This document shows positions 2,293 to 49,500 of a stretch of DNA of 64,000 nucleotides, in pieces. Under the pieces are notes generated by a model. It saw nothing but the letters and a program-made list of their open reading frames with translations, searched no databases and was not told where the DNA came from. This DNA comes from Ramazzottius varieornatus. Taxonomy: Eukaryota; Animalia; Tardigrada. Each line of letters begins with the position of its first letter. Positions within the stretch are counted from its first letter, which is position 1. Both the position numbers and the translations under genes were made by a program. The stretch is from assembly GCA_001949185.1 (NCBI GenBank), contig BDGG01000008.1, positions 682,001 to 746,000 on the forward strand. The letters are read 5' to 3'.

Positions 2293-2922
2293 GTCTTACA
2301 GTTGCTAACACTGTTCAAATGATTTCGTTTTGAACTTCGTTTGCTTCATCTCGTGTGGCAGACAGGTGCAAAACCGCAGATCGAGGTTGAAATTGTCGGC
2401 CACTGTCGAGCGCATCACATGAAAAGTTGCCGGACCAGTTTCTCCCGCTGTGTAAAATATCGTACCGCAGGGGCTTTCCTTATGCCGTTCCGTTAAGGTT
2501 CACCGAGGGTCTGTGTTTGTCGCACTGAAAGATTCCATTCTTTCGTACTCAGCCAGCCTTCTTATTTGGACATAATGGTGTTACGTATCTAAAGTGCGTT
2601 GGGTGGCAAAGCTACCCGTCATGAAGTTAACGCTGTACGACGAAGATCACGCTGCACCAGTTATACTGATACCGTGGGACGGTGTTAGTTCGCGAATAGC
2701 TCAAGACCTGTGAGACTGGTACAGCAGGATGGTCAGGTCCGAAGCTTAACCCACGTGAGAACCGGAAGTGCCAGTGTGGTCCATCCAAGACCTGAGCGAC
2801 CTGTCGGATGTCGCACTCATCCTTCCCGGAAAGCACGCTTGTGCCATGTTTCTAGAGTATGTAGCCAGGCTACTGACGATTAATACAACTTTTGCTGTTA
2901 GCAGTAGAGGTCTGACAGGCTC

Positions 2923-5750: not shown

Positions 5751-5968
5751 ATTGAAACTTATCCACTCTTTACTGTCTACTTTTAAAGTTCTGATCTGGC
5801 AGTTCTAGTTTATCTTTCATTCGAACATTTTAGCTTGTTTCATGTAAATTTAACTCAAGTGCTCCTTCTGATAACCACACGGTATTTTCACGCTTGAAGC
5901 GAAGCACTATAAATATTAGAAAATCCGGCAGGTTTTTTGTTATAAAAGACAATCTGGTTCGAGTCATC

Positions 5969-8334
5969 CTAGTCAACAGGCATGTCCTCCGGGCCCGACT
6001 TAGCAGTCGTGGCTGGTGCTGTCGTTTCGGTTGCAGGCTTTGGGTAGGTTCGCAGTGGTCGAGGTCCATAGAGCAGCAAGTAGGCGCAGTGCCAGTCGCC
6101 GCCTCCAGACAGCTTCAAGATCTCTTCTGGATGGACGCCGGAAACCTTATCATCGTCAAACTTCAGCCAAATGTCTGAAACGCAACGCAAGGTTGAGTCA
6201 TACGGGTCTGGCCATTTGCAAGACGAACTTCTTACCTCCTCGCTTGACCCAACCAACATAATGTCCACTGTTGTTGGTCCTTCCTTGATGAGTTAGAACG
6301 GCCTGTAGTTCGTAAAAGCCGCTGTTGTTGGACCCAACATCTGTAATCAAGATCACGATAGCCGTAACGCTGAAAGAGCGACCAACACGGTAACCAAACA
6401 CCGGTACCGACCATCGGAGAAGGAGAAAGGTTCGTCAACGTGAGGCTCATCGTCATCTTCCTTCACTAATCCCTTGGTCAGCTAAAACGAAAGCCATAAA
6501 GCAAGTCGTAACAGGGTTAGAAAGCTTGGTATTCGTACTTTGATCGCCCGTTCCGTCAGATAGTCGTCAGTATCCTTAAACTTTTGCCGCATGGGCACCA
6601 ACTTCTTCTGGAGCACTTCGGAGCACAGATCGAAGACATCCAACATGAAAGGAAATTTCACATCCTATTTAACAGGAAAAATAAGTATGCAATACTGCTT
6701 CTAAATTCATCGATGTGCTGTGCTGTGCTGTACCTTCAAGATCTTCGCGCCAACCGCTGCACGTTCTTTGAAGAAGAAGCGAACAAGCTGAACCGTTAGA
6801 TACGCGGGAAGGCGATCAATCTTGTTCACTTTCTCAAACTCGGCATCGCGACCCAAGGTCTCCGAATGCTTGGTGATAGTCTCCCTCAGCCGACCAGCCA
6901 GTCCAGCTTGAAGATACTTCACATCTGTAACCAAGAACCAACGAAATCAACTTCACACTCTTATCGAGGGAAAACGTAGAATATCTTACCTTGGTTGATG
7001 AAGCAGCTCAGCTGGAGAAAAGGCTCTCTGAACTGCACAACAGGTTCCGTTTCCGATTCCTTGCATTTCATCGTCACCGCGAACTCCCCCCGCAAGTACT
7101 GGTCCACGACATTGCTGTTGGGTGTAGCTGCACCGAGCTGCTTCTTCAAGTTGTTCATCAACTCGGTCCAGGCTTCGTTCGCGTCTTGCTGGGCGTACCC
7201 GCCGTGTTCGCCTCTTTCCGCGAACCTCGGGTAAGCCTTCCTCATAGTCTCCACCAGCACCTATTCCGACAAACCATGCCACATTCTCCACCAAACGTGT
7301 TCACTCTACTTAGTCCGAAATCCGACTGATATTAGACTTACCACTGGGACGACTTTCTCCGGGTTTCGGTCCATTTCATCGTACGTCACCTTCACAGCTT
7401 GAGTTACCGACTGGGACTTTGCTTGCTCGGAATCGAACCCGGCGAAGCTTCCGGAAAAGCTGTAACAAGCATCATAGATTAGTTTTTTAGTTTGTCAGCT
7501 CGTTATGTCAAAGTGTTTTGACTTACTTCTTCAAGGCCTTGCGAAGTTCGGGGATAGCCCGGAAGCACTGCACGGTGGCATTCAGATAGCAAGTATTGCC
7601 CAAATTCATCAGACCCAGAGGATTGTCATCCTGATATGACAATGAACAATTAGAATTTTCCTGGTTAGCCACGCTAAAGTTTATGTAAACAGTCGGTAAA
7701 AAAAATAGTACAAGGAAGGCAAGAGTTATCAGTTAACATGTAGCAATAAACATTTCGAACCTCTTCATCCGCAGCACTGCTTGATGGGTCCTTCCCGTCC
7801 TTTGACGATGCTGCAGGTGGAGGACCTGTAGGCACTCCCTCCGTACTGCCCATCATCATGATCCCGGAACCATTTGTCAGCTTAATGTCTCCCCATGCAT
7901 CGTCCTGACGACCATCCAAAGTTACCAAACCAGTCATGGCAGCGTCTTCCCCACCAATATTAGGCAAGCACACCTAGTTTTGAAAGCGACATACCTGGAT
8001 GGTCTTTCCTTTCATCAGCAACTTTTGTCGATCCGGAGGCACTCCCGACAGAGCGAAGAGTTGTGCTGTAATGCAGAAAAAGACACTGCAGACTGAGCGA
8101 GAATTCACTTGTACGGACCTGTGTTATCAATATTTAACAAACAGCGCAGTACCTTTGAAAGTTTCGGGAGGCTCATCCGTGTTCACTTCGACGTTGTCAA
8201 ACTTCTGTTTGCCCCACTTTACATTGACTGCAACACAACAACCCTGATAGTTTCTGCCATTCTGCCTTCAAGAAAGCGTGATGGAGCAACAGGAAAATCG
8301 AAGTATCTAGAAGCTTACCGGTTACAGCGGGCAT
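5969..8334 (-). CDS. USP14: Ubiquitin carboxyl-terminal hydrolase 14 (multi-exon)
   Basis: Ubl N-terminus MPAVT/VNVKWGKQKFDNVEVNTDEPPETFK; Cys box GLMNLGNTCYLNATVQC; QQDANEAW; His box HQGRTNNSGHYVGW; LKLSGGGDWHCAYLLLYGPR. Confidence 0.95.
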
Positions 8335-28504: not shown

Positions 28505-31039
28505 AGTGAATACTCTGTAAAACAACCTACGAAAGACGAAGCGCTTGTTCATCAAGCATATGCATCCACCAGCTGCAGCAGCCATACAGACGGTGAGTTT
28601 TTGCCATTTCCGGTTGACGTCAAGCTGGTATCTACGATCTCTACAGAACATTCATGGCGACAAATAGTTTGCTAACCTGGTGTACAGCTCCTGATGAGAT
28701 CCGTGGGTGTTCCAAGGTATGAATCCGCTGGAGAAATCCCTGGGAAAGCTCGAAAGCTTGAAAAATAGCTGCTGGCTGCGACACTGCGTCGTCGATCGAG
28801 ACGGCTCCGATCCCTATGGAAATGAAACAGAGTGGTAGACTGAATTGTCATCCACGATGATGATGGTTGATGGAGACCAAGAAGGCATCACGAAGCGAGA
28901 GATTGCCAGAATTCCCTTCTATAATTGCCTCCGGAAACGCAAAGAGTTTTGTGCCGACTGCCGAAATACGCGCGACGGATCTTCTGGTAGCGAGAAGATT
29001 ATCAGCGAGTGAGAGCGCGTTTGACGTCAGACTGCGGATCGTTCTGGCGGACACAAAGACCAATCAAAAAGTCCGTTGGCGCTGAATGGGCGCCAAGAGT
29101 TTTCGGCTGGGCGGCATGCCTTGTGGTCTGGGAGCCAGCAAACCACTCTAACAATTGCCCCTTCCGCCAGTGCGAACCAGGCGGGGATACATGCCAACGG
29201 AGCGAGTTAAGATGCGAGGTGGACGCCTCTTTCGTCCGCACTAACATATCAAACCGTGGTAAACACTTTGGTCATACTCGGATCTTCCGGGATCTTCTTT
29301 TGTTCTCTTCGTAAATGTCCCACTTGCAAGTTTCATCAACAAGGCGCCGATGAAAACCGAGGCTTGTCATTTTCCCTCCTTTGCTACTCTTTGTTCGTTG
29401 TTTTACCCGAACTTTTGCCTCATCTTTTTCTTTCTTTTTGTTTCAAAGTCAAAAGTCCAAAACTGAGATTTTGTTCGTTGTTTCCTTTTCGTTACTTCAC
29501 TGACGCTTCTTTTTCTTGCAGGTTCTTGTTTCCGACTGGGCGGTGAAAGGTCGGAAGATGCCGAGCGTCGAGCTTCCTGAAGAGGCTATTCCGAAGGACA
29601 AGATGGCGGCGGAGCTGATGCAGTGGATCACGAAAGCTGCAGAGGATTTTCCTGGAGAAGGTGACACGTCTCAGTCCTTCCTCGACGAGATATTTCCTCC
29701 TCCGCAAGAGTTTGAAGGTGGCGTCCTGACACAACAGCAAGAGGAAGTACAGTCAGAATCGTTGGACCACAGCCTGCTGGACGCTAAACTTCCTGATATC
29801 AGCGTCGGCATCATGTGGCCCCTTCTGTCTTCAGAACTGAACGGTATGTCCTCCACGTCGCCATGGCCGAACAAGAAAGAAAGCTTGGATAAGGCGGAAG
29901 AGCCGAAAGACTTGCCGGTTCAGTTAGAGACCCCCGAAGAACCCAAAGATCTCCCGGAAGTGAAGTCGGAGTCCCCAGCCGAACAGGTGCCATATAACGA
30001 AGAAGGACCGAAGTTCGTACCTGAAGCTGAAGAAAAGAACACTCCCGAAGAGCTCAGGGAAGTACCGGAATGTGTCTTTGTGGGCGTTGTCGACGAGGAA
30101 AGTAAAGTGAGCGGATGGGAAGACTTCATCACACAGTCGGAGATCGGCAAAGGTATTCGTAACTTTTGGTTTACTTTCGATTCTTATCTAACGGCGCCTC
30201 TTTCCATCATCAGGTGACTTTTCCCTGCTGGAGGCTGACCAAGGTATGGGAAGCGACTTTGGAAGTGCAGAGAAGGCTCTGGATCATCCAGCAACCTACA
30301 CTGAAGAAGAAAAGCCACTGCTACTTCTGGACTTCTCGCCACAAGGTACTCCCACACCGCCTCCGTCGGAGTCGACGTCCATAACCGAGATGAAAGTAAG
30401 TGAGTCAGAAGCAGGAGACGTCGAGAACGACTTGGAACAGCTGGATGAGTGGATGGAGCAAGACCCTTCTCTTCAGCCTTGTCCAACGATCGACGATGTG
30501 GAGGTGAGCGACTGGGCCACTGAGGACGACGAGTACGTCACGGCAAGTAAAGCTGAACCTGAAAGCGCAGCAAAGACAAAGACTCCCGGTCCGGACTTCC
30601 TTCTTCCTGGATCCACCGACGAGCGATGGTATAACACGTCCCCCCAGCTTTTGAGTGTCGAAACGAGGTAAGTCAGTGTACTATCTCAATAGCCTTGCTA
30701 TTGTCATCGGACAAGTATCGAACGTTCCTGGTTCTGGGTGTAGATACTGAATCTCATCCGGAACAACGATGTCTCCATCATCACTGGAAACACTGGGTGC
30801 GGGAAGTCCACCTATGTTCCACTCTTCATCATGGACGAGATGGAGATTCGTGGTTCCAGCTCGAAAGCCTGCAACATTCTTGCTGTACTGCCTCGTCGCT
30901 TCGCAGTGACAAGCTTGTCAAGCTATATCTATCAGAAGCGCGGCTACTTTCTCGGGAAGAAGATCGGCTATCAAGTACGTTCACTTCGATCTTTCAAATT
31001 TTTTTCCCAAAATTGGAGCTGAGCAAGCAAACCGTACAA

Positions 31040-31115
31040 GGTGTTCCTTTCCTGTGGCGCACGTTCTCGTCGTAATTGGTCGGAAGAGTGCGCCACTGAA
31101 GTTAACCATCTTGCA
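31040..31115. mobile_element. Dispersed short palindromic element (GTGGCGCAC family)
   Basis: CTGTGGCGCACGTTCTC…GAAGAGTGCGCCACTG in a spn-E intron. Confidence 0.65.
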
Positions 31116-34100
31116 TGTTTTTTTGCCCAGCTTCTGGATGTTGTCTTTTTATGTTGTTCATTCATCTTCGTCGTTCTGCAGGTCGGCATACAGACGGCGG
31201 TCCGCTCACGAGGAACGAAGATCATGTTCGTTACTATTGGTGTCTTCCTCCAAAGAGCCTGTAACGTATTGAGCAAGAGTGAAGATCCTAGCAAGGAGGA
31301 CCCTTTGGCTGGGTAGTCTCACGTCACCATCGACGAGGTGTGTGAAGCCTTTCACTCACCGTAGCTTTTGCTCGGATAGTTTTTCTAAACTGTCAATTGT
31401 GCAGGTGCATGAACGGTCTGAAGATGTCGACTTTGCCATGCTGTTGATGCGGCAAGCCGTTGGGAAGACTAAGGCGAAGGTAACGTAATTAAACTTAGAT
31501 TCTATATTCGTATCTTTCAAGTAACAAGTGGTGAATACGGTGCCGGGAAATTTTGCAGATTATTCTGATGTCAGCCACAATGTCCCTGAAGCCCTCCCTG
31601 GATTACTTCAAGAATGACATTACCACGATGCGGCCTTCGCATTTCGACATCACCGGAAAACCCGCGCAGTCTGTCGAAGTTGTGTACTTGGACGACATTG
31701 TCAGCGACCCTCCGGTAAAGTCTAGCATACTTTTAGAGGCTAGCATTGACTTAACGTTTTCTCGTCGTTCTTTTCAGGCCTTTTATATAGATAGACAACA
31801 GTTCTCGGATCTCCTCATGGACTTGGTACTTCGTCACATCGACAGGGAATTTCAGCGATATCCGTAAGTCGCATAGATTTCAAGACGAAACCACGCAGGA
31901 AGCTACAACAGTGTAACCGGCGATCATTCTGACAGGAACAAGAAGGACCAGGGAACCGTACTAGTGTTCCTTCCGGGTCTGGACAACATCGAACGAATGC
32001 TGGAGCGTATCAAGGAAGATTTCGGATACAGAGTGTGAGTTTTCGCTGATCGACTGGATTGACTTTTGATCTCTAATCTATCCGGGACAAGTGTTCCAAG
32101 TTTATCGATGGCTTTTTGAAGACTGTAGGCGAGAATAAGTTACACACGCTTACACATGCTTTTTTCGATGCAGTCCAAGACAGTAAAAGTCTGCAAGCTG
32201 CATTCGTTGTTGTCGCAGCAGGTCCAGGCCAAAGTCTTCCGGAAACTTCGACCGCACGTTCTTCGAATCGTACTGGCTACCAACATTGCGGAGAGTTCCA
32301 TCACTGTACCGGAAGTGGCGAAAGGTACTCGTACTGAATTACTTATTCAACTAGGAATTGTTTGATGGATGACACCCAATGATTCCCAGTTTACATACCT
32401 AGTAACGGGATATGTTCCAGTGTACGATTTTTGCTTGACGAAACGGATAGTGACCGACAAAGAGACGAAGATGACTTTCCTCCAGATGCAGTGGGCATCT
32501 CAGAGCAACTGCGACCAACGCAAAGGTATGATAAATCTTGCATCTAGAAATTAACACTGAGTCCGCACACCGTTCCGTTGAAGCGGAACGAAGATAAGTT
32601 ATTAAATTTGTGTGTTCGTAGGTCGAGCTGGACGAGTGCGTGATGGCCAGGTCATTCGACTGGTTCCTCAGTGGTTCTTCGAAGAGTTCGAGAAGCATCC
32701 TCGTCCAGAACTTTAGGTACGGATATTACTGTGCAACATAAATCAAACAGTCTAGATTCTTAATAGCTCCACCAACCTTGTTTTGATGATTGACAGCTGG
32801 TGGCGCCAACTACATCGATCCTGCGGCCGAAGGTGATGGGATTTCCAGGGAGTCCGTTAGATCAGATGTCCAACAAGATGATCGGACCTGAGAAGCCCGA
32901 TGAACAGGAAGTTCAACGGGCCATCTTGTGGCTGAAAGAGGTAGGTCGATCTTTGGGCTTTCTAATTCGTGCTGAGTTGAACTTTCACAATAGTTATGAG
33001 CTCCACTTGCAGAAAGGTGCGCTGAGCCTGTATCACAAGAAAGAACTCAAGACGGACGACGGGGACACATCTGCTTCCTCCTTCCCCTCTCTCCAGCTCT
33101 GTGCCGACTAATCTATTTCGCGTTCTCTTTCGGCATGGTGGACGACGGTATAGTCCTGGGTGGGTTCCTTCGCTAATTTAAAGCGCACTCGGTAACCAGA
33201 GCTAAACTCTGCTCTTTCTTGCAGCTTGTGTGATCAACGCCAAAAGTCTTCTGTCTTCGGCGATTCGAACGCAGGACAGTGGTTACTTCTCGAAGCGGTC
33301 TTTCGATGGTGGAATGAAGAGCGAGTCCCTGGCATCTTTCCGAGCTTTCCGGGTAAGGGGAGTTCGTAACGTGACGAACGTGAAGACCTTCATATAGTAG
33401 CACATCCAATATTTTCGGTTTCTGGTCGATGAGAGCTTGCGTTTCTCTAGTTGACTGACAATCAGAAGACTGAGACTTAGGAAGAATAAAAATTTTCTAT
33501 TTGAATAGGTTTGGATGTCTCGAGGTGAAGCCGGTGAGTTCCCCGCTCTCAACCAGGAAGGTGAAGAAAGTGACAAGTCCCGTGCCGAACAGCGATGGTG
33601 CGAAGCAAACTCGCTTTCATTCATTCGACTGCGAGAGGTAATCTCCAGGCTTCTCGTAAATATTCTCATTCCATCTTTTGCAATGTTGACATCTCGATTA
33701 GTGTTGGCGGTTTCTTTCCGGACTCGCATCATGGTGTACGAGATCAGGTTTCGAGTCTTCCAGATCGGACTGTACAACGGAAACCCGACGTACTTCCTGA
33801 AGGAGTTCGAAGCTGACCCGACGTGGCAGCTCGTCATGAAGGTAGTTTCCCTTGAAAGTTTTGCTGGAACATTCCGGTGGTTTATTCAAAGTATCTTCTT
33901 TCAGATCATACTTGCGGGCGCCTTCTACAGTATTCCGACTACGTTATTTCCGCTCCCAAGCTGAACCCAGGCAACACGGCCGAAACTCTCAAAGAAGCTG
34001 CGGAAGCTAACTTTAAAAAGTTCGCCGGCCTGGATCCCTTCCGAACAGTCCAGGTATCCCTTCCTGGTCAGTGGAAGTACTTGATGCCGCTGTTCTACGA

Positions 34101-35250
34101 CACGCAGCTTCGTCGCTGGCTTGCTTCTGTTACGGAAAGCGACATGACTCCACAGATCATCTATTGTGGAAGCCAGCAAGTCCCTTTTTTTACTGCGTTT
34201 TTTCTCATGAGTTTCATGCCATCAAAATTTTCGTTAATAGTTTCAGCTTCACGCCTTTAATTCTTATCCTACAGGGCTTTAATTTCGCTGAATCAAACGG
34301 TCGATGATGCGCCAAGTCCACCTTGCTGTCCGGCGAGAAACTCATCCGTTTGAATCACCGGTACGAACACAAAGTTATCTCGTTTGAACATTACGCCATG
34401 TCATGTTGTTTCTTCTACGGGTAGAAATGCTTACGGAAGGAGAGTGATCGATGTGAGCTTCGACGCAATCCATAACAGCTGTGGTCAAGATCTTCTCAGC
34501 CAAATGCCGGACCTGCCATGGTGGGTTTCGCATCCATAGACTGTCTCCTTTGACACACAATGTCATATCCTCATGCCAGAGTTAGGGCTGGCAAACTGCA
34601 TTGTATTCTGTCTAATCATGATGTCTTCTTGTTCGTGAAGGTTCAAGCTCGAACGGACTTCCGACCAGCGACAAATTTCGGCAGCGGTATTCCCCATGGT
34701 CGAGTCGCAACTTGGGAGCCCAACCCGCCCACAAATCCGCATTACCAAGGTAGGTGGTAAAATTATGCAGTTAGCTGTCGTAAACTGAAAAGGGAGGCTA
34801 CCGCGGCAGGAAATAGTGAGTTTTGACTGTGTCAGATTTTCTTTTTCATTTTGTAGGCTGTGGACGAGTGTTCCTTTTACGCCCGGATCTTCGTTGTGGA
34901 CCGGATCCCATCCAGGAAGTTGATGGTTTGATCATCAGCATGGTGACTGAACGCCGTTGCCGACCACCGGTTCGTATCGTTTACACTTTGGTACTTTTCT
35001 CGAGTTTTCAACTGTGAAGTTCGTCACTGTTCCTGTCTTCCGATAGGTTCCCTCGGAGTAATCCACACTCACTGGAAGATTTGTTCTGGCTGACTTGAAG
35101 GTGTCGGTGTCGAAGACGGGCCTGCGCAAGTCATGCGAAGCTGCAAGGGCGGTATCGTGGAGGTGAGCGTCTCTATCTGTCGCTTTAATATGTAATGATG
35201 GTTGTACAGCGGTCAGCGTAGACTCTTTTAAGATCTAAATTTCTAGTATA

Positions 35251-35404
35251 CTGTAGTGCTACCAAATTATCGCGCACTCTAGCACGTGAACAGTAAATGA
35301 TGCCCGGGTGTGAGCCAGCGAGGCTAAACTGATAGCATCTGATCGCACTGGGCTGCGATGACTCATCACGTGGTGCAGTGCGCGATAATTTGGTAGCACT
35401 ACAG
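35251..35404. mobile_element. MITE with CTGTA…TACAG termini (Tc1/mariner-superfamily-like)
   Basis: 28-bp TIR CTGTAGTGCTACCAAATTATCGCGCACT / AGTGCGCGATAATTTGGTAGCACTACAG; TA on left, AA on right; inside a spn-E Tudor-region intron. Confidence 0.82.
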
Positions 35405-37667
35405 AAGTATTTTTTTTGCGGCCAGGTCTTCTTTGTGGACTTCGGTATACGGTCTTTGGTCTCGTGCGGCACCATTCGCTTCGTTCCTCCGTTCGAGAAG
35501 CAGTGTATGTCGTTCTGGGAGACGCCAGCACTCGCACTGGAATGCTCCTTGCCGCATCAGTACGTCTACTGTGGGACAGAGGAAGGGAAGCTGGACCTTT
35601 GGTCGCGCTACGCAAAGGAAAGCCTCTGCTGTGACGTAAGCATCTGACATCTAGAATTGAATGGGCAATTGCTTAACGATATTCACCAGTTTCCCAATGC
35701 GGCCAAAGGTTATCTGTTGACTACAGATTGGAAAGAGTCACGGAAATGGCGCACGATCTACTCACTGTGGACCCTCTTTCTGGTTTTCATTTGTCCATGT
35801 ATCGCAAACTTCAGGAGCAGGGTGTATTCTACAAGGATGAGTTTGCTTTAAGGCCGGTACGAACCCATCGCAAGGCTGACAGTTCTGGCTCAACGAGTAC
35901 GCCTTCAGATAATTGTTTTCTTTTTCCAGCGGATCTTCCCGTTGGAGAAAGTCGTCGTCATCCCGCACGCGGCTCTGCCGGACCCAGTTTACCTTCCGAA
36001 CGATGCGCTTGGACCCAACGCCTCCGTCAAGGTGCGGCTAAGTTTATGTCCCGTGGATATTCTTTTTACAAGCAAGCTCATGAAATTAACCCTATCTTTC
36101 AGGTTCCGCTTCCTGGTCAACCGGACAGCCCGTTCGAAGTTCAGGCATATGCTGGCGGAGACGATCGATGGACGTACATGCTTCCTCGGTAAGCATACTG
36201 TACATCCAGCTTGGTCACTGGGTGGCCGAGAAGACTTGAATAACCTTGGTCCGATGTTCTTTTGTAGTATGGTCCAAATTCAATCGGAAAGCCTGAACAA
36301 CGTCGTTCTTCGGAAGCAGAAGCCGGGTTCTTGTGCGGTCTTGGTGCCAGGCCTAAACTACCTTGCTAGCTCTCTGTTTCCGGCTTACGACTTTTTCATC
36401 AACAGCGATGGTGTCTTGGACCACGACGATGTCGAGACGGTAAGCCTGAGTGGAAAAACAGCGACCCGTTTTAATTTAAAACGTCAGAGTACCTTCTTAA
36501 AGGTCAGATGACTCTAGTCCAGTTTACTAACGCTGTATGCTTCACAGATTCGTCAGCTGAGAGAGGCCATGAACACCGTTCCCGTTGAAGCAAACGAGTA
36601 CATCTTGACTGGCCGCACGTCTGCCGAAGAGGTTGATTACTTCAAGCAGGCTCCGGAAATCCAGGCTGGTCTGCGCGAAATGCTTGTTACGTGAGTACAG
36701 TACGCATACAGTACATACAAGCACGAACTGACTGACAGATCCAGGTTGAGTAATTGGTGAAATTTTCTTTCAGGTCGTTCCGACGTTTCCGACCGGCCAA
36801 GATCACCTGTGAATTGAGACCCGGCGACCCGACTAGCTCCCTGTACTGGAACAGCGCACATCCCGATCGAATCTCCCTACCAGAGGACCCGGCTGAACGT
36901 CGATCCCTTTTGAATCGCATCAATTACGATTAGGTTGCGAGGATCGGGATGCGCAGTCTTTCAGTAGTTTCTCCTCGTTCTAGTTCAGAATATTTAATCT
37001 TTCATTACACTTCTAGTTTAGGCTATCTTTTTTTATGTACGATTTTCACTCCGTTGTTAGCAGCAGCTTTCGAGTACTAGTTGAATAGGCCGCTTTCTTT
37101 TGGGTTTCGGGCTTCCAGGATTTTAGCCTTTCAGCTGTTACAGACAAGATAACCATTCCATGTCGAACATTGTTCTTTGTCTACATTAAGCTCTTTGGAC
37201 GGAAACTAAGCGTTGTCATATTTGACTTCGATTTTCACGGATATGGTCGGATACTACAGAGGGAAAATAAAACGGCGCAGAATTAATTTTGTGTTCGGTG
37301 GACCGACGGTGGTGAGTGTGGTGACATCTACCGCGTCGAGCTGAATATCAAATTTGTCAACCAGCTTGTCTGTTACCTATGGTGCGCCATCCCGTGGAGC
37401 GAGAGTGACTAGACAGTCCATCCCAACTTGAAAACAGTTCATCTTTCGAACTTCCCGAGTTCCCGTTCTGTTCCGCTGGAAGACAAGCCACTCGTTCATA
37501 TCTCTTTGCTTCTAGCATTTTGATACGGAGTCTGACGGAGTCTGGAGGTGCGGATCAACCAACCTGTGCTACACCATTGACTTAAGAGTACTTGGGCCTC
37601 GGACATCTCGGCTGACGCGTTTGACGAAGTGAAGATCAGTATACGACTACACTCTAGTGACCCTACT

Positions 37668-41645: not shown

Positions 41646-44600
41646 ATGGCGCACTCGCTTGGTTTTATTTTTTTGCTTTTGCGAACGTTGGTGAGTACCC
41701 GGAAGTCTAGGTCTCCTGCTCTTAGTTGGGTCGTTCGTGAAACGAAGTAATAAGGTATGACCCTTTTTCCAGCTTCTGATATCTGCTCACAGCCTGCATC
41801 AACAGTTCTCGTCCGAAGAACTCATGAGGGTTTTCGGAACCACCAATCTAAACGAAAGTAAGAAAGAGCAACACATCTAGAGCATGATGATCTTCAGCCG
41901 ATTCAAAATATAATCGAAAGAATTTTGTCTGTTTAGTTCCAGAGTACCAAGTTGCTTTTGCTCAACTTCACGCCCTCCGAAAACGCAGTCTTATTCCAAA
42001 CGATAATCTATTCTACCGTCTCAACATGGGAGGTCGGGATGTCACACTCCATCTGTCTCCAAACAGAAGACTAATATCCCCACACTTTGTGCTAAAGCCA
42101 GACGGACTCAACGTCAACATTTCAGCCGCAGCCGAATGTCTGTACCACGGTCGTTTCCTGAATGGAACAAGAAGAGCAGCCGTCTCTACATGCGGCGAAC
42201 CGGGTTTGGTTAGTGCGAAATATTTCATAAAATTTCCTCAGAAAATCAGAGAAAAATGTGGTCTCTTTAAAAACGAAAAACCGAAAATCAGAAATTCGTT
42301 CTCGCGAGTTCCGCGACGAAGAGTATCAGCTGGTAAACCATAAGTCGTTATTTGATCCTACACATTTTGTCCTGTCATGTGTGAGTGTTCGACCTTGCAG
42401 ACAGGGATCATCGAAACTGAATCCGGCGGATATATGCACTTACATCCGGTTCCATCACGCTTCCAAGAAAACGTTGCTGATCAAGGCCATATGCATATAC
42501 TGGTGCCGAAAAATGACACGGAGACCTTCTGCGGTAATACGGGAAACCTTTACCTTGTCAAAAGTGACGTTGTTGTCTATCGTATTTCTTGTTCTCCAGG
42601 TTCCGAAAGCATTCAGCAGAAGCTGAAGGTTGAAAGTGAGATTCTAAACAAGGCTCTAAATAGCACACGATCAGTTTACCGCCATCAACGACAAGCGACA
42701 CCTGATAAACTCTATATCGAAACCGCCGTGTTTGCCGATTTCATGCTATACAAAGCGTTGATCGGCAAGACCTTCATCAACGACCACGACGCATTTGTGA
42801 AATATGTCCTAGCCATTGTCAACACGGTAACACGATACATGTGGCTTTGCTGTATCGGTGACGGACATGGTGAAATCAATACAAAATTTGTTTACAGGTT
42901 CAGCTAATTTACAACGAGCCTTCACTTGGACGCTCCGTGGAGCTCGTCCTTGTCCGACTGGAAATTCTCCAGAATGACAATCTACCTTTTTATAACGAGG
43001 AAGTTGACAAGTACCTGTGGGACTTCTGCAAATGGCAATGTATGCATACTTTAAAAAAATTCCATAGTTCAACAATTAAAGTCTGCGAAAAATAAGCGAT
43101 TTGTATCAAAATATTTGGAGGCTCGGCGAACAAGCTCGACGAGACTGTTTCCAAGAGGTGCACGTTTTCTCTGTTATTGGCTGATGGCGTGCTTCACTTG
43201 GGATAAGCGATCTTGTTGAGTTTGTTTTCCTATGTCCACCTTACTGTATTTTCACCCAAGCCTCTGAATTAAATATGAAAAATTTTCATTTTAGCTAACT
43301 TGAATCCCGGGACCGATACGTCGACACCGACACACTGGGACCATGCCATCATATTGACCGGTTTCGACTTACGCAGTGGCAACATTCGTTCCGTGACTGG
43401 TCAGTGGGTCGCCGCCTCAGGCACCATATCCTTTTACAAAAATGCTTAAATTTCTAACTTTCTAGTTCGAACCAAATACTCATTTTTGACCTATCCGAAG
43501 TGTTATGACAGGGGTTTTTTGCGGTTCCAGTTCTTGAAATTTAGATCGTTTTAGGCTACGCGCCGGTCGGAGGGATGTGCAACCCAGTGTACAGTTGCAC
43601 CATCAATGAAGGAAACCATTTCGGATCGGCATTCGTTATCGCTCACGAGATGGGTCATAGGTACCGTACTATCTCTCTTACACCTCACTGGCTTTCTCTA
43701 CAGGGTGTACTTTGCAGTTTGACGATGCAGCACGATGGTCAGTCCGGAGCATCGGGTAACAGCTGCGACGCCCAACGGTACCTGATGTCTCCCTCCACAG
43801 GACGGGGAAAGACCACATGGTCGTCGTGTAGCCAGACTTACTTGGATGCCTTCCTGCAGTCTCCACAATCCCAGGTAAGATACCGCAAGTTCCAGTTTCT
43901 GTTCGTCAAATTAAGTGATATGGGAAGCTGTTCGTGTGTTTTAGTGTCTCAAAGATGTTCCTACTGGACGGGAAAATGCATTGGATTTTAGCCACACTAG
44001 CTTGCCTGGTCAGCTTTATTCCGCCGATGATCAGTGCCGCTTACTGTGAGTGAAATCCGACTTGACGATTTATAATTGTGGTGAATCGCTCAATCACTTT
44101 CATCCGTCTTTGCAGGTATGGAATGGAATTTCATCGGTATCCGCTTCAACCCGACCCGGTACGTTTTTCGTGAAGCCTAAGACCAAGTTCAGTTTTTTAC
44201 GACCGGACCGGCTTGTTTTGTCGCAGGACGTTTGTGAGATTTTGATTTGTGCGAACACCACGGTGTACATCACTGGTCATCCGGCACTTCCGGGTACCTT
44301 CTGCGGAGAAGGAAAATGGTGCGTGAGCGGTGCTTGCAGTCCATGGGGCAATGAAGGACCCATGGCGGTGGACGGAGGGTGGTCGGCTTGGACTACGACA
44401 GCTAGTTGCACCTCGAACTGCCTTCTCCCTGGAGCTGGACTTCGGGTCTTCGAAAGGACCTGCACGAACCCTGCGCCAGTCAACGGAGGTCGTCAGTGCG
44501 TTGTACGTATGCACAACCTTCCGCTAGTTGGATTTTAAATCTTTTGTTCTTTTCTACTGACAAGCCCATAAAGGAATTTACAGATCAAAGTGCGATTTTC

Positions 44601-46323
44601 TTACAGGGAAAATCTAAGCGGTATCAGAAATGCGATGACACGTCACTTTGTACCGCTCCAGCAATCCTTCCAATCAAGGCTTACGCCAACCAGCAGTGTC
44701 AGTCCACCAGAACCACTCAGCTGGATTCCTCCCTTGTGGGTGTGGGTCGTCAGCGTAGCCAAGATCCAACAGGTGGTTGCTTGGTATGGTGTGACACATT
44801 GCAAGGTGGATACAAGACGTGGGGAGCCAAGTTTCCCGACGGGACAAGCTGTGGCAGTAATGACGGGGCGTCTTTTTGCATTGAGGGACAGTGTAAGGCT
44901 TTCGGCTGCGATGGCTGGTTAGCGGAAGACAGGCCAGGAGTTCCTTGTACATCTTTGCCGACGGGTCGCAAAATGTTTCATATGGCCTTTGATATCAACC
45001 AGACGGAAGTAGCAGCTCAAAGTACAGCTTCCCCAAAGACCACCAAGGCTCTCGTGACCACGGTACCGATGACGAAAATTGAGACATCCGCAAGGAGGGA
45101 TTCCCCGAAGCCGCCACCAAAGTCCAGGTTCTGGTCACCTTGGCAGGAAACCGGAATGTGCGTCTCGAGCTGTGTATCGGATAGCATAGGAGTAAGGAAA
45201 GTGGTTCGTCAGTGCGTGCCTTCTGGTGGAATCTGTTTAGGACGTTCGACGGCCATGGCGCACTGTACGCCGTCTTGTCCGAAAATGCTGTTCACCGGTA
45301 TGCTTAGTTGGAAAATTTTCGCCATATTTTTACCGCTTTATTATTTTACCTACGACTACCGGAAATAGCAAGTTATTCTGGTTACAGCGGATATGTATGC
45401 TACGAAAATATGTACCGCTCTAAGGACGGTCGATTCTTCTCTGACCGGAAGTGGGCAACAGTTGCCATATTCGACGGACGATCCGCAGCAGTCATGTAAG
45501 CTGTGGTGTCAGAGAGAGTCCTCCCTGCAGTCCTGGCCGGAAATGTTCTTTCCCGATGGAACATCTTGCGGGGAGCCTGACGGTGCTAAGCGATACTGTC
45601 TGAAAGGTGATTGTTTGCTGCTCGGATGTGACGGCAAGTTGGCGCACCCGGAAGACCCACCAGTCGTCTGCACAGAAACCAGTCACAATTTAGTTTCGTC
45701 GGGAGCAGAGGACAGGCGGAAACAAAGCCATGCCAAGCTGTCCGTGGTGGACAAGCCACAGACAGGAAGAATTCCGTTTATCTTGTCAAATGATACGGAT
45801 CCGTCGTTCCAGTGGACAGTTGTAACGACACCTTGTTCGGTCACTTGCGGAGGAGGTAACTTAGGCTGGAATTCGAATCTGAGAAATAAACGCGAACTTA
45901 ACCTTGGTCAACTGTTTTCTCTTAGGTTCGAGGAAGAACTATGTCCAGTGTGTTGCCACAAGTAGTTTAACGGATAAACAACGCAGAAAAGTCGACGAGC
46001 AACTGTGTGATGCTAGCGAGAAACCAAACGCTTCGTTGGAAGAAGCCTGTAATAATCAACCATGTCCCGGGTAAGCATGACTTGAGTGCTCTGGCCCTAT
46101 AACAAGTGATAACTCTTGCGGGAATTTCAGATGGAGTGCAAGTAAATGGGGCGACTGTAACGTGGATTGCGGTAAAGGCAACATGACAAGGTTTGTGCAG
46201 TGCGTCCAAGTGTCGCCTTCGATCGGCAGTGTCAAGGTGGAAAGTATCCTGAAAGATGATGCCTGCGACCTGAGCAGTAAGCCCACTGCGACACAGACTT
46301 GCGTTCTACTTCCCTGTTCCTGA
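41646..46323 (+). CDS. ADAMTS-family secreted zinc metalloprotease with thrombospondin type-1 repeats
   Basis: Signal peptide, prodomain (LHQQFSSEELMRVFG..PEYQV), furin-like RHQR, LYIETAVFAD, HWDHAIILTGFDL, zinc motif HEMGHSLTMQHD with Met-turn YLMSP, TSP1 VDGGWSAW…, C-terminal TSP1 (CSVTCGGG, WGDCNVDCGKG). Confidence 0.9.
43117..43266. mobile_element. Dispersed short palindromic element, most complete copy
   Basis: GGAGGCTCGGCGAACAAGCTCGACGAGACTGTTTCCAAGAGGTGCAC…GTGCTTCACTTGGGATAAGCGATCTTGTTGAGTTTG…CAAGCCTCT in an ADAMTS intron. Confidence 0.65.
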
Positions 46324-46566: not shown

Positions 46567-49500
46567 TCAATACTGAAAAGTGCTGTCAGAGCGCACTTGA
46601 GGCATCAGTGCGGAAGGCAACTCTTCCTTTCCTTCTAGGCAGACCGGCGGAGCTTGAGTCATTTCGAGCACGTTTCTGCCAGTGATTTCACGATAGACTT
46701 CATTGCATAACGAGCTGAGGTAGCTTCCATAGTCCCCAAGCTTTGCAACTGAGTCCGCCATATCTTCGCCGAATGACGTCACTGCGCCCGTAGCGGACAA
46801 GGAGATCAGCTCTTCGAAACATTTGACTGCCGCATCGTTCTGCTTGTTCTCCTCAAGGAAACTCGTCAGTTTGGCTTTTATTTGGCGCAAGACGAAAGAG
46901 TCGATGGCCGAAATGGTCTCTACGATTTCAGGGCGATCAGTTTGCGCCAGCGAAGACTTGTCTTTGACATAGTCAACGTTCGTCCACGTTTCCTTCAGCA
47001 GTATCCAAAGACTGTGCAACGACAATCGAAGGTTCTCATGGGTGCGCCACAGTCTGCAGACCAAATCTATGAGGTCGGTCCCTGCTGGTGTATACTCTAG
47101 GTACTTCGTGATGCGAAAGCTCTTGAGCAATATGGCTTCCAACTGCTTCAACAGATCGCACTGCAGAGCTTTCGGTGCGTTGTTCAGCAAGCTAACCAAC
47201 CTTTCCGGACACTTACCTATCCAAAAAGATATCTACCATTAATCATATCGACAGGTACATTACGATAAAACATAGCAGATATATTTTATCATACGCATTT
47301 CTGTTGAACAAAACAAACCGGTCCTGTACGGTCCGGCTCACCTAGTAAAAACTGGTTCTCGGCTTCTTCATACCCAGCGGTCCAGGTCGCCGTTGAGGCG
47401 AATAGGCATTTGACGATATCTTTGTCCATAGGCTCTTCCAGCCTGAAGTCCCGCTGGAACAGCCGAAGAGCGCTTCGAAAAGCCAACCGTTGAATGACCT
47501 CCAGCACGGTCGGATCTTTCGCCGCGCTGTAACTCAAAATGGACAAAACATTCCGAATGAGCACGGTTGACATGCTCTTTCCCATCAACTGAGACTCTTC
47601 GCTGGCGATAGTCAAGACCTGCGTCAATACACACGCTCCTTCTTGGGCAACAAGGAAGTCAGCCAGAAGGGGATTTTCTGGAGTACTTGTGCAGAGTATA
47701 GCAGATATGAGGTCGATCAAATCTTTGATTAGGTTCGAGTGCTGGAAGTCGTTTGTCTGCGCCAGACAAAAATGTTCCGTATCCAAACTTATGAGTCCGT
47801 TCAGCAAGCGGAGAACTTTTCTGCTGCCTCCTTGTCTCACAAATTCCGCCACGACACGAGGGAAGACTTCCACCAAACTGTCGATTGCGCTTCCCCGAAT
47901 GGACTCATATTGTTCTCGTGACCAGAAACTTCGTTCGTGTTCCCCAAACGGAGCGAGATAGTACAGGAGACTAGTGGTGATGTTCTGGCTGTCGAAGTCT
48001 TCATCGGTGTTTTTGGACTTCGCCGAGGTCGCCATTATCTTGAGTAGGATGTGTTTAAGCATGCAGTCTAGCTTGTGCATCTGGAGTCTTGTGTCCGAAA
48101 CCGGACATTCTGGTCGAACTGCCAGCTGCAAGTAGAAGCGGTAACTTCCGGAAGAGAGAAGCGCCGAAGCTAGTCGAACGTTTTGCAGAGCAAGCTCCAA
48201 CAGCAACGAAAAGATGACGGCGTAAGTGTTTCGTATTAGTCGGTCTGTATCGTGGACCGCAGGGAGGTAACGCTGAGATTGCACCAGCAAGGCCTCCACA
48301 ACCTATGAAGGAACCAAAGTGCCACTGTATTAATTCACACAAGTCAGCTGATCGAACGACCGTCGACATACCGAGTTTTCTGAAAATACGTCCGCAATCA
48401 GGTCTTTGGCGTTTTCGTCCTTCGAGTTGCCACTGCACAAACGGCAAAGCAGCCCAGAAATCAGGAACTTCTCATGTCGGTGACTTGTGATATCCGCACT
48501 TCCGTCTGAAAGCGCGTCAACAACTTCGACCAGCCTGTTTACCAGACCTTGCTGAAGTAGGATAGGTCCACATGCCGGAAAGAAATCCAAGTAATCGCGT
48601 AGAATTTCCAATAAGGGCGTGAACATATCTGGGGAAAAGCACAAATTTGTCCAAAAAACTGATCAGACAACCACGCATGTGCCATCATCTAATTCAAAAT
48701 TATTCCTACCGTGCGCAGTAAAATATACCTCGAGAAGGATGACGACAAGTGAGGGCAGAATCGTCGAATAAGTGATGGCAGAAATAATGTTGACAGCAAA
48801 GTCCGTCTGGGAACCGCTGGCCACTTCCTCTTTAGCGTAGCCCTGAAGAGTGCCGACCACCGGAATCGTTACACCAACCAACCGAGTCCTCAAGACCGCC
48901 AGTACATTCCCGACAACATCATAGAGGTCTCGCAGATGTCCAGAGTTTGAATGTAGCGCGTTCAACGACTGCGAAGTAACTTTCCTACTGGCAATACAAA
49001 GTAATACCACGAGTCTTTCGGAATAGTCGGCAAATGCTTGTTCCTCGTTCGCCATCTTGTTTATGACGGCTTTGATTAGGCAACTCAAGACTTCAACTTG
49101 CTCGATCCACAAGCTATGCTCTCCTTGTAAGTTCAACACCTTGTCTACTGCGAGCAGCTGACGTCTGCGGAGATCGTCGTAGAACCGGTCGTTGAGGATG
49201 AACACTGCTTGGACAGTGGCGTCAGTGATGAGTGTCAACGGGTTATCCGCTTCGATCTGTAATGTTTCACAGGGCGGTCGCATGAGTACCTTTCGTGGAG
49301 CATTCCCATATTGACTGACGAAGCGGACATCGGAACGGGATCGGAGGATGGCGTTTCCACCCTTCTTTAGGGCACACGCACTCTTGCTGGGAGCTTGGAT
49401 GCTTGCCGGCGGTTCCATCAAGGCCGATCCGGATGCAAAGTCAAAAACTATGTTACTCTTGCAGCTTACTTTCGTCTTCGATACTGCTGTGGTCCGTCTC

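What the first reader, a model, noticed from the sequence alone, without database searches (positions are those of the whole stretch)
29558..36933. The piRNA-pathway helicase spindle-E/TDRD9 is a decaying pseudogene amid apparently intact housekeeping genes
Seen, threading exons on TDRD9 motifs: (a) a -1 frameshift in the C6 run at ~30640 (restoring one T gives SLPAFECRNE|ILNLI, in phase with the Walker A exon; as written it stops at 30669); (b) an in-frame TAG at 32714-32716 just before the donor (…HPRPEL*); (c) a frameshifting deletion at ~33066 removing the LTxLG of the HA2 motif (DGD / ICFLLPLSPALCRLI in different frames); (d) a +5 insertion at 33926; (e) probable further lesions at ~34300, a TAA at ~35059 and a frameshift at ~35095 in the Tudor exon. 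Established: Spn-E/TDRD9 is needed for ping-pong piRNA transposon silencing. Inference: this copy is dead, meaning either loss of a core TE-defence gene or a decayed paralog. I saw no comparable lesions in the neighbouring exons I threaded (GPCR, CANT1, an SMC5 exon), which argues against general sequencing error.
Basis: partly seen in the sequence, partly recalled or inferred. Interest (0 to 1): 0.85.

Follow-up and report, generated by a model that had tools for sequence, protein, structure and literature searches.

The report
Transcribed dead TDRD9 helicase paralogue
In the tardigrade Ramazzottius varieornatus, this locus is a broken but still transcribed and spliced copy of the piRNA-pathway helicase TDRD9/Spindle-E; an intact TDRD9-like gene and PIWI genes elsewhere in the genome mean this is a decayed paralogue, not loss of transposon defence.

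Summary
Window 29558-36933 (R. varieornatus, contig C8) holds a 29-exon gene of the TDRD9/Spindle-E clade. Its conserved reading frame is broken about 12 times. There are about eight frame breaks.

The lesions are not assembly errors. Contigs from one DNA run and from three RNA studies (2016, 2021, 2023) match the assembly with no base or indel difference. The RNA contigs are spliced at GT..AG introns exactly between the exons, so the lesions sit in a mature mRNA. The longest ORFs of that mRNA are a 351-aa non-helicase N-terminal ORF and a 257-aa C-terminal ORF. The public annotation has only a 92-aa fragment (RvY_12929) that ends at TAG 31314.

The "loss of a core TE-defence gene" reading is not supported. 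A second TDRD9-like gene on contig C4 is open, keeps all helicase motifs, and is 57% identical to Paramacrobiotus "TDRD9-like". It lacks a Tudor domain. Two PIWI-clade loci are also present.

Verdict: an expressed, unprocessed pseudogene of a fast-evolving, Tudor-bearing TDRD9 paralogue. This is solid but fairly ordinary. An earlier scan note on this same window (s1-795045) had flagged the TACAGTA footprint; nothing was found on other DNA.

The parts
29558..30667 (+). Two 5' exons (29558-30152 and 30214-30667) carrying an acidic, low-complexity ORF. After splicing to 30744 it runs 351 aa and stops at 30748-50.
   Evidence: ORF map of the spliced model. 30300-30665 is contiguous in RNA contigs and the 30667|30744 junction is seen. 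No Pfam hit. The 30152|30214 junction is predicted only.
30640..30645 (+). C6 run, the likely site of a 1-nt loss that uncouples the upstream ORF from the helicase frame.
   Evidence: E1+E2 is 1049 nt (3n+2). The frame encoding PPAFECRNE, which joins ILNLI, opens only at 30635. The run length is the same in DNA and RNA contigs. That the upstream ORF was ancestrally joined is an inference.
30744..32940 (+). Ten exons of the DExH helicase core (Walker A GCGKS, DEVH, SAT, TNIAESS, QRKGRAGR). All introns are GT-AG.
   Evidence: 432-codon in-frame conceptual model with two stops. TDRD9 profile hits are colinear. Junctions are seen in RNA contigs. PDB hits are DHX9, DHX36 and Spindle-E.
31314..31316 (+). 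In-frame TAG four codons before IDE|VHER. This is the first stop in the helicase frame.
   Evidence: The likely orthologue fragment P0004 has Tyr here. The stop is in RNA contigs with no other letter. The annotated 92-aa RvY_12929 ends here.
32033..32034 (+). Two extra bases (GT) kept in the mRNA because the donor used is 32034|32035. This shifts the frame into exon 32174-32324.
   Evidence: Contig arithmetic: 185 nt lie between exons D and G, against 183 nt for the in-frame model. The site reads AGA GT|GTGAGT. This is inferred; the joint itself was among those not printed.
32714..32716 (+). In-frame TAG at the end of the motif-VI exon (…HPRPEL*).
   Evidence: It aligns with the Leu of PEMLR in the C4 paralogue and of PEILR in beetle Spn-E.
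33013..33352 (+). HA2 exons. A frame change at about 33066 comes with loss of about 5-6 residues (the LTxLG stretch).
   Evidence: The profile hit at 33063-33161 lies in a different frame from 33013-33066. The two exons sum to 275 nt (3n+2) between phase-0 ends. 33048-33158 is contiguous in RNA.
33702..33721 (+). 20 nt included through a cryptic acceptor at 33701|33702. The position that would keep the frame (before 33722) now reads GG instead of AG.
   Evidence: Contig arithmetic: 888 nt lie between exons G and N, which requires a 140-nt exon at 33702-33841. Sequence. Inferred.
33926..33932 (+). TACAGTA: 5 extra bases that break GAFY|(P)DYV in the OB-fold region. This fits a Tc1/mariner-type excision footprint.
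   Evidence: Profile hits change frame across it. The exon is 275 nt and contiguous in RNA. The local MITE family has TA target duplications and CTG…CAG ends. The heptamer occurs 10 times in the window, so it is not rare in itself.
34305..34307 (+). In-frame TGA in exon 34275-34360.
   Evidence: The 34360|34425 junction is seen in RNA.
34857..34969 (+). First Tudor-region exon (…ECSFYARI… / …PIQEVDGL…) with a 1-nt frame change near 34895.
   Evidence: The exon is 113 nt between two phase-0 junctions, both seen in RNA.
35047..35162 (+). Second Tudor-region exon. It has an in-frame TAA at 35059-61 and a frame change near 35095.
   Evidence: The exon is 116 nt between two phase-0 junctions, both seen in RNA. 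Each frame holds one stop.
35251..35404 (.). 154-bp MITE inside intron 35163-35425. Harmless here.
   Evidence: 55-nt inverted arms. At least 40 genomic copies at 88-96% identity. TA duplications and CTG…CAG ends in five copies. It is spliced out in RNA.
35426..35635 (+). Tudor core relic exon (VFFVDFG … PALALECSL).
   Evidence: It matches TDRD9 profile positions 974-1018 at 9.1 bits. Pfam TUDOR and the PDB do not detect it.
35727..35856 (+). Exon whose conserved frame is one base out of phase with the junction 35635|35727.
   Evidence: The junction is seen in three RNA runs. The exon is 130 nt (3n+1) between phase-0 ends.
35930..36933 (+). Five C-terminal exons with no lesion. The stop is at 36931-33. 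With ATG 35746 they form a 257-aa ORF.
   Evidence: Weak colinear profile hits at positions 1174-1305. Junctions 35856|35930 and 36031|36103 and a loose end at 36188 are seen in RNA.

Best explanation
This is an unprocessed (intron-bearing) pseudogene of a Tudor-bearing member of the TDRD9/Spindle-E helicase family in Ramazzottius varieornatus. The promoter and all 28 splice-site pairs still work, so a roughly 5.2-kb mRNA is made and spliced. However, four nonsense codons and about eight frame-disrupting changes leave no ORF that covers even one RecA domain, so no helicase can be produced.

The frame-disrupting changes are small indels, a donor slip, a lost acceptor replaced by a cryptic one, and a 5-base transposon-type footprint. 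The catalytic motifs are still readable, and lesions are few relative to length. Death is therefore probably fairly recent, following a long period of fast evolution (inference).

The TDRD9 role in the piRNA pathway is most likely carried by the intact, Tudor-less TDRD9-like paralogue on contig C4 (inference from conservation, not shown).
For: Identity:
- The genome is R. varieornatus, and the only annotated product here is the 92-aa RvY_12929, which ends at TAG 31314.

Family:
- The locus falls in the TDRD9 clade with SH-aLRT 99, sister to RvC4 + Paramacrobiotus TDRD9-like at 92.
- The DFCLTK exon hits only Spindle-E 9nhs_G in the PDB.
- Colinear TDRD9-profile hits run from Walker A to the C-terminus, including the Tudor core.

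Lesions:
-.
- The longest mRNA ORFs are 351 aa (non-helicase) and 257 aa.

Lesions are real and are in the mRNA:
- DNA contigs and RNA contigs from three studies show no other letter and no indel.
- There are 15 printed GT..AG joints at the predicted exon ends.
- RNA runs hold about 45% of the locus words, which is about the exonic share.

Intact paralogue and pathway:
- The C4 gene is open and colinear with beetle Spn-E and with Paramacrobiotus TDRD9-like, 57% identical over 478 columns.
- PIWI-clade loci are present.
- H. dujardini has ping-pong piRNAs (PMC4323106).
Against: - No orthologous DNA could be fetched, so dN/dS and the date of death are untested.
- Two of the frame breaks (32033-34 and 33702-21) rest on contig-length arithmetic, not on printed joints.
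- The 5' and 3' ORFs (351 and 257 aa) are lesion-free, which is mildly unexpected if decay is uniform (about 6% by chance for the first quarter).
- The transcript is abundant enough to assemble in at least 8 RNA runs despite early stops. Some residual use is therefore not excluded.
- All data come from one laboratory strain.
Confidence: 0.86

Rival explanations
1. The lesions are assembly or sequencing errors, and the gene is really intact.
For: One lesion sits in a C6 homopolymer.
Against: One DNA run and RNA contigs from three studies (2016, 2021, 2023) agree with the assembly with 0 other letters and 0 gaps over every covered lesion. These include the C6 run, TAG 31314, 33066 and 33926. Four of the lesions are base substitutions.
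Confidence: 0.02
2. The gene is functional through alternative splicing, stop-codon readthrough, RNA editing or programmed frameshifting.
For: Two of the stops are TAG. A potential acceptor exists at 33930 that would skip the 5-base insert. RNA contigs break between 34176 and 34505, and one contig (34147-34304) runs through the predicted intron, so isoforms exist there.
Against: About 12 independent breaks of three stop types plus indels would all need rescue. The assembled transcripts use the junctions that keep the lesions, and exon 33905-34176 is contiguous. No edited letter is seen, although contigs do drop rare variants.
Confidence: 0.03
3. The locus is dead as a helicase but kept for something else. 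Candidates are the 351-aa acidic N-terminal ORF (a truncated protein) or the RNA itself.
For: The 351-aa ORF from ATG 29558 is uninterrupted. All 28 introns keep GT-AG. The transcript assembles at word depth 28-54 in RNA runs despite an early stop.
Against: The N-terminal region has no Pfam domain and is low-complexity. Intact splice sites and expression are expected for a young pseudogene. No conservation data are available.
Confidence: 0.1

Closest known systems
Spindle-E / TDRD9 (DExH-box helicase with HA2, OB and extended Tudor domains; ping-pong piRNA factor; PDB 9nhs chain G)
   Same: Same clade in the helicase-core tree. Same domain order along the locus. The family-specific DFCLTK linker exon matches only Spindle-E in the PDB.
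   Different: No open reading frame. The LTxLG stretch of HA2 is deleted. Motif Ia reads VLPRRFAV, where the C4 paralogue and beetle Spn-E (P0146) read TQPRR/TQPRK. The Tudor relic is too decayed for Pfam. The terminal branch is about 3 times longer than that of the other tardigrade TDRD9-like genes (1.34 against 0.41).
Tardigrade 'TDRD9-like' genes (Paramacrobiotus metropolitanus XP_055337489, 995 aa; R. varieornatus gene at G000:C4:3087.7-3091.4 kb)
   Same: Nearest relatives in the tree (SH-aLRT 92). 32% identity over 590 aligned residues.
   Different: Those genes are open, slower-evolving and lack a Tudor domain. The window gene keeps a Tudor relic and a long acidic N-terminus, and it is broken.
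Transcribed unprocessed pseudogenes (duplicated-gene relics that keep promoter and introns)
   Same: Introns are retained, the locus is spliced and expressed, it carries multiple premature stops, and an intact paralogue lies elsewhere.
   Different: The paralogue is old and distant (32% identity), so this is not a recent duplicate. Functionally it may amount to loss of the only Tudor-bearing TDRD9 in this species.

Membership tests
TDRD9 / Spindle-E helicase family | DExH helicase core with motifs I, Ia, II (DEVH), III (SAT), V and VI | tested here: met
   The exon-by-exon conceptual translation shows GCGKS, DEVHER, SAT, TNIAESSIT and QRKGRAGR. Pfam Helicase_C hits exon G. The PDB finds DExH helicases. 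Motif Ia is degenerate.
TDRD9 / Spindle-E helicase family | Groups with named TDRD9/Spn-E proteins rather than DHX9, DHX36 or other DExH helicases | tested here: met
   A 44-row tree on 548 columns gives SH-aLRT 99 for the clade holding beetle spindle-E, hagfish TDRD9-like and tardigrade TDRD9-like. The DFCLTK exon hits only Spindle-E 9nhs_G.
TDRD9 / Spindle-E helicase family | HA2 / OB-fold module after the core | tested here: inconclusive
   Weak colinear profile hits at positions 526-771. The GAFY and DPFRTV motifs are readable. The LTxLG stretch is deleted and Pfam HA2 was not detected.
TDRD9 / Spindle-E helicase family | Extended Tudor domain C-terminal to the helicase | tested here: inconclusive
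   A profile built from seven TDRD9 proteins matches 35423-35557 at positions 974-1018 (9.1 bits). Pfam TUDOR and the PDB give nothing. The positions where the TDRD9 profile consensus has aromatic residues (YYRAR) read PAQVM here.
TDRD9 / Spindle-E helicase family | Encodes a continuous protein | tested here: not met
   Four in-frame stops and about eight frame breaks are present in the mRNA. It is therefore filed as a relic of the family, not a working member.
Transcribed unprocessed pseudogene | Several independent disabling lesions confirmed in independent sequence data | tested here: met
   one DNA run and three RNA studies are identical to the assembly.
Transcribed unprocessed pseudogene | Introns retained and the transcript spliced | tested here: met
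   15 GT..AG joints are printed and the rest fit contig lengths. All 28 modelled introns are GT-AG.
Transcribed unprocessed pseudogene | Neutral evolution (dN/dS near 1) since inactivation | not testable with these tools
Only protein fragments P0003 and P0004 were found. The long branch is suggestive only.

The most novel reading that the evidence does not exclude
The window gene, not the C4 gene, may be the tardigrade counterpart of canonical Tudor-bearing Spn-E/TDRD9. In that case R. varieornatus has lost the only TDRD9 able to dock on methyl-arginine PIWI tails and runs its piRNA pathway with a Tudor-less TDRD9-like helicase conserved among eutardigrades. Alternatively, the still well-expressed transcript has been re-used, as a 351-aa acidic protein or as a regulatory RNA.
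Probability: 0.2. Interest if true: 0.55.

Novelty: new member of a known kind. Interest (0 to 1): 0.3.

Why it matters
The finding corrects the annotation: RvY_12929 is a pseudogene fragment, not a 92-aa protein. It also shows that R. varieornatus has not lost TDRD9 function outright.

It reveals that tardigrades carry two old TDRD9 lineages. One is Tudor-less and conserved. The other is Tudor-bearing, fast-evolving and now dead in this species. That gives a concrete, testable handle on how much of the Spn-E Tudor module is dispensable for ping-pong piRNA biogenesis.

It is also a clean example of a pseudogene whose splicing and expression have outlived its reading frame. One lesion looks like a MITE excision footprint.

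Tried and rejected
A 5.3-kb stretch, in line with the operators' size note, worked.
- The search for homologous proteins with P0004 gave only P0003 as close kin.
- Pfam and the PDB do not see the Tudor relic, the HA2 pieces or the N-terminal ORF.
- A rescue of lesion (a) by an acceptor at the C6 run was considered. It was rejected because RNA contigs run unspliced through 30300-30665.
- A rescue of the 5-base insert by the acceptor at 33930 was considered. It was rejected because the assembled transcripts start the exon at 33905.
- A variant genetic code or TAG readthrough was considered because the first two stops are TAG. It was rejected because TGA, TAA and many frameshifts follow.
- Scan notes searched by words gave nothing on piRNA genes.
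- Neighbouring-gene integrity was only glanced at.
Exons were searched one by one by reference. The joined translation, with X at each break, was used only inside scripts, for the tree and the ORF arithmetic.
Full report
**Source and setting.** The window is G000:C8:682001-746000 of a 55.8-Mb, 200-contig genome. An exact protein look-up identifies it as Ramazzottius varieornatus. The only database protein encoded here is GAV02350.1 / RvY_12929, a 92-aa "hypothetical protein". That model starts at ATG 30831 inside the Walker-A exon, splices 30974|31182, and ends at the in-frame TAG 31314. The public annotation had therefore already stumbled on the first stop.

**What the locus is.** Three-frame reading and a splice model give 29 exons from ATG 29558 to the stop at 36931-33. 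All 28 introns are GT-AG and 62-263 nt long.
- The ten core exons (30744-32940) translate to 432 codons with GCGKS, DEVHER, SAT, LVFLPG, TNIAESSIT and QRKGRAGR.
- A search of 1.84 billion representatives with the Walker-A exon returned DExH helicases. The full-length proteins that align furthest along the locus have the DEAD-Helicase_C-HA2-TUDOR architecture. One of them is named spindle-E (P0146, beetle).
- In a 44-row tree on 548 columns, the window gene lies inside a clade with SH-aLRT 99. That clade holds beetle spindle-E, hagfish TDRD9-like and tardigrade TDRD9-like. The MLE/DHX9-like and other DExH proteins lie outside it.
- The exon encoding YDFCLTK…QR hits a single PDB chain, Spindle-E 9nhs_G.
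- A profile built from seven TDRD9 proteins matches the locus colinearly from position 117 to about 1305. This includes VFFVDFG…PALALECSL at profile positions 974-1018, the Tudor core.
- Pfam itself does not detect the Tudor relic.

**The lesions.** Following the conserved frame through the exon model:
1. The upstream ORF (E1+E2, 1049 nt) is one base short. After splicing it stops at 30748-50. The frame that encodes PPAFECRNE and joins ILNLI opens only at 30635, next to the C6 run.
2. TAG 31314-16, four codons before IDE|VHER. The orthologue-like fragment P0004 has Tyr there.
3. Two extra bases at donor 32034|32035.
4. TAG 32714-16, aligned with the Leu of PE[IM]LR.
5. A frame change at about 33066 with loss of about 5-6 residues including LTxLG.
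6. The acceptor position that would keep the frame, before 33722, reads GG. A cryptic acceptor at 33701|33702 adds 20 nt.
7. Five extra bases, TACAGTA, at 33926-32 inside GAFY-(P)DYV.
8. TGA 34305-07.
9. A 1-nt shift in exon 34857-34969 (113 nt).
10. TAA 35059-61.
11. A shift in exon 35047-35162 (116 nt).
12. A one-base phase clash at 35635|35727 (exon of 130 nt).

Each frameshift is independently required by exon-length arithmetic between junctions of known phase. Items 2, 3, 6, 9 and 12 are new. The last five exons (35930-36933) are clean.

A 5.3-kb request succeeded.
- Three DNA rows hold 99% of the locus words. These are probably the source sample.
- Seventeen probable RNA rows from five further studies hold 25-47% of the words, which is about the exonic share.

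Laying one DNA run and three RNA runs from different studies on 30300-36200 gave these results.
- There was no base difference and no indel anywhere in the gene. The only listed variant, G>A at 35335, lies inside the intronic MITE and comes from other copies.
- The DNA contig spans 30300-35276 without a change.
- The RNA contigs carry 15 printed GT..AG joints at exactly the modelled exon ends.
- They run unspliced through 30300-30665 (the C6 run), 31182-31335 (TAG), 33048-33158 (the HA2 shift) and 33903-34176 (TACAGTA).
- Piece coordinates within the 3460-nt and 3007-nt contigs fix the lengths of the unprinted exons. There are 185 nt between exons D and G, and 888 nt between exons G and N. These figures reveal lesions 3 and 6.
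- A short contig (34147-34304) runs through the predicted intron 34180-34274, and the long contigs break there. Isoforms therefore exist at that point.

The locus is thus transcribed, spliced and stable enough to assemble, and its mRNA carries the lesions. In the spliced model the longest ORFs are 351 aa (the acidic N-terminus, no domain), 257 aa (C-terminus), 131 aa and 126 aa. None covers a RecA domain.

**Is TDRD9 lost from the genome?** No.
- Searching the genome with beetle Spn-E finds a better match at C4:3087.7-3091.4 kb (38-41% identity, open frames up to 694 aa).
- Its exons are long and open, with GSGKT, DEMHER, SAT, TNIAESS, IDLCLTK, QRKGRAGR, PEMLR, LTSVG and GAFYPNYF.
- It is colinear with, and 51-58% identical in the core to, Paramacrobiotus metropolitanus "TDRD9-like" (995 aa).
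- Both lack a Tudor domain, and the C4 gene has too little sequence between the OB-fold and the C-terminal domain to hold one.
- In the tree the window gene is sister to this pair (SH-aLRT 92), but its terminal branch is 1.34 against 0.41. It is only 32% identical to the C4 gene.
- Two unnamed fragments from ENA and Logan assemblies (P0003, P0004) share the window gene's peculiarities: VPLF.MD.M and an insertion before the DEVH box. They group with it on the Walker-A exon (SH-aLRT 88, 76 columns). This lineage therefore exists in other organisms, where motif Ia is canonical. Their contigs could not be read.
- The rest of the pathway looks present. About ten Piwi-domain loci were found. Two of them have PIWI-clade proteins as best PDB matches.
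- H. dujardini has Piwi and ping-pong piRNAs (PMC4323106), and H. exemplaris has two piwi homologues (PMC9948961).

**Mechanism and history (inference).** An old duplicate of TDRD9, the one that kept the Tudor domain, evolved fast and then lost constraint in the Ramazzottius lineage. Four nonsense changes in about 1,390 codons, together with still-readable catalytic motifs and only one hit among 56 splice sites, suggest a few per cent of neutral change since death. That would make it a young pseudogene. One lesion fits a transposon footprint:
- The 154-bp MITE family that also sits in intron 35163-35425 has TA target duplications, CTG…CAG termini and at least 40 copies at 88-96% identity.
- TA-CAG-TA is what excision of such an element leaves behind.
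- The heptamer is not rare by chance (10 per 64 kb), so this link is suggestive only. It was first raised in scan note s1-795045.

**Limits.**
- All sequence data come from one laboratory strain.
- Contigs hide rare isoforms and RNA editing.
- There is no orthologous DNA, so no dN/dS.
- Two lesions rest on arithmetic.
- The 30152|30214 junction and the transcript start are not covered by the laid stretch.
- The joined model was never sent to a search tool.

**Verdict.** The "dead gene" interpretation is right. The "loss of a core defence gene" reading is not supported. This is a well-documented expressed pseudogene of a divergent TDRD9 paralogue. It is of moderate interest mainly for tardigrade piRNA biology and for annotation.

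Noticed in passing
G000:C4:3087700-3091400 (locus L010, about 2470-7000): An intact TDRD9-like helicase gene without a Tudor domain. It is the orthologue of Paramacrobiotus metropolitanus 'TDRD9-like' (995 aa). Tardigrades therefore appear to keep a Tudor-less TDRD9.
   Followed up: partly
window 35251-35404, and at least 40 other places (e.g. L015-L019): A 154-bp MITE family with 55-nt inverted arms, TA target duplications and CTG…CAG termini. Copies are 88-96% identical, so the family was active fairly recently.
   Followed up: partly
window 30831-31316: The annotated protein RvY_12929 (GAV02350.1, 92 aa) is a gene-model artefact. It starts at an internal Met of the Walker-A exon and ends at the pseudogene's TAG.
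   Followed up: yes
window 34147-34505: RNA contigs of two studies break here, and one contig runs through the predicted intron 34180-34274 (weak donor GTCCCT). This points to intron retention or alternative splicing in the pseudogene transcript.
   Followed up: no
G000:C5:2406500-2410000 (L025) and G000:C4:2615500-2619500 (L023): Two loci whose Piwi-domain exons match PIWI-clade structures (Piwi-A, Siwi, Piwi-like 1/2) far better than AGO-clade ones. About ten Piwi-domain loci were found in all.
   Followed up: partly
L010 about 3615-3821 and 4629-4778: Two introns of the C4 gene hold similar short stretches (translations share ATQNT… / …NIVI…/…NVLIL). This is possibly another small repeat family.
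   Followed up: no
window 44406-45365 (+) and 47292-48299 (-): Long open exons with an Adt-1-like domain and CFAP69 ARM repeats, respectively. These are neighbours of the pseudogene and look open.
   Followed up: no
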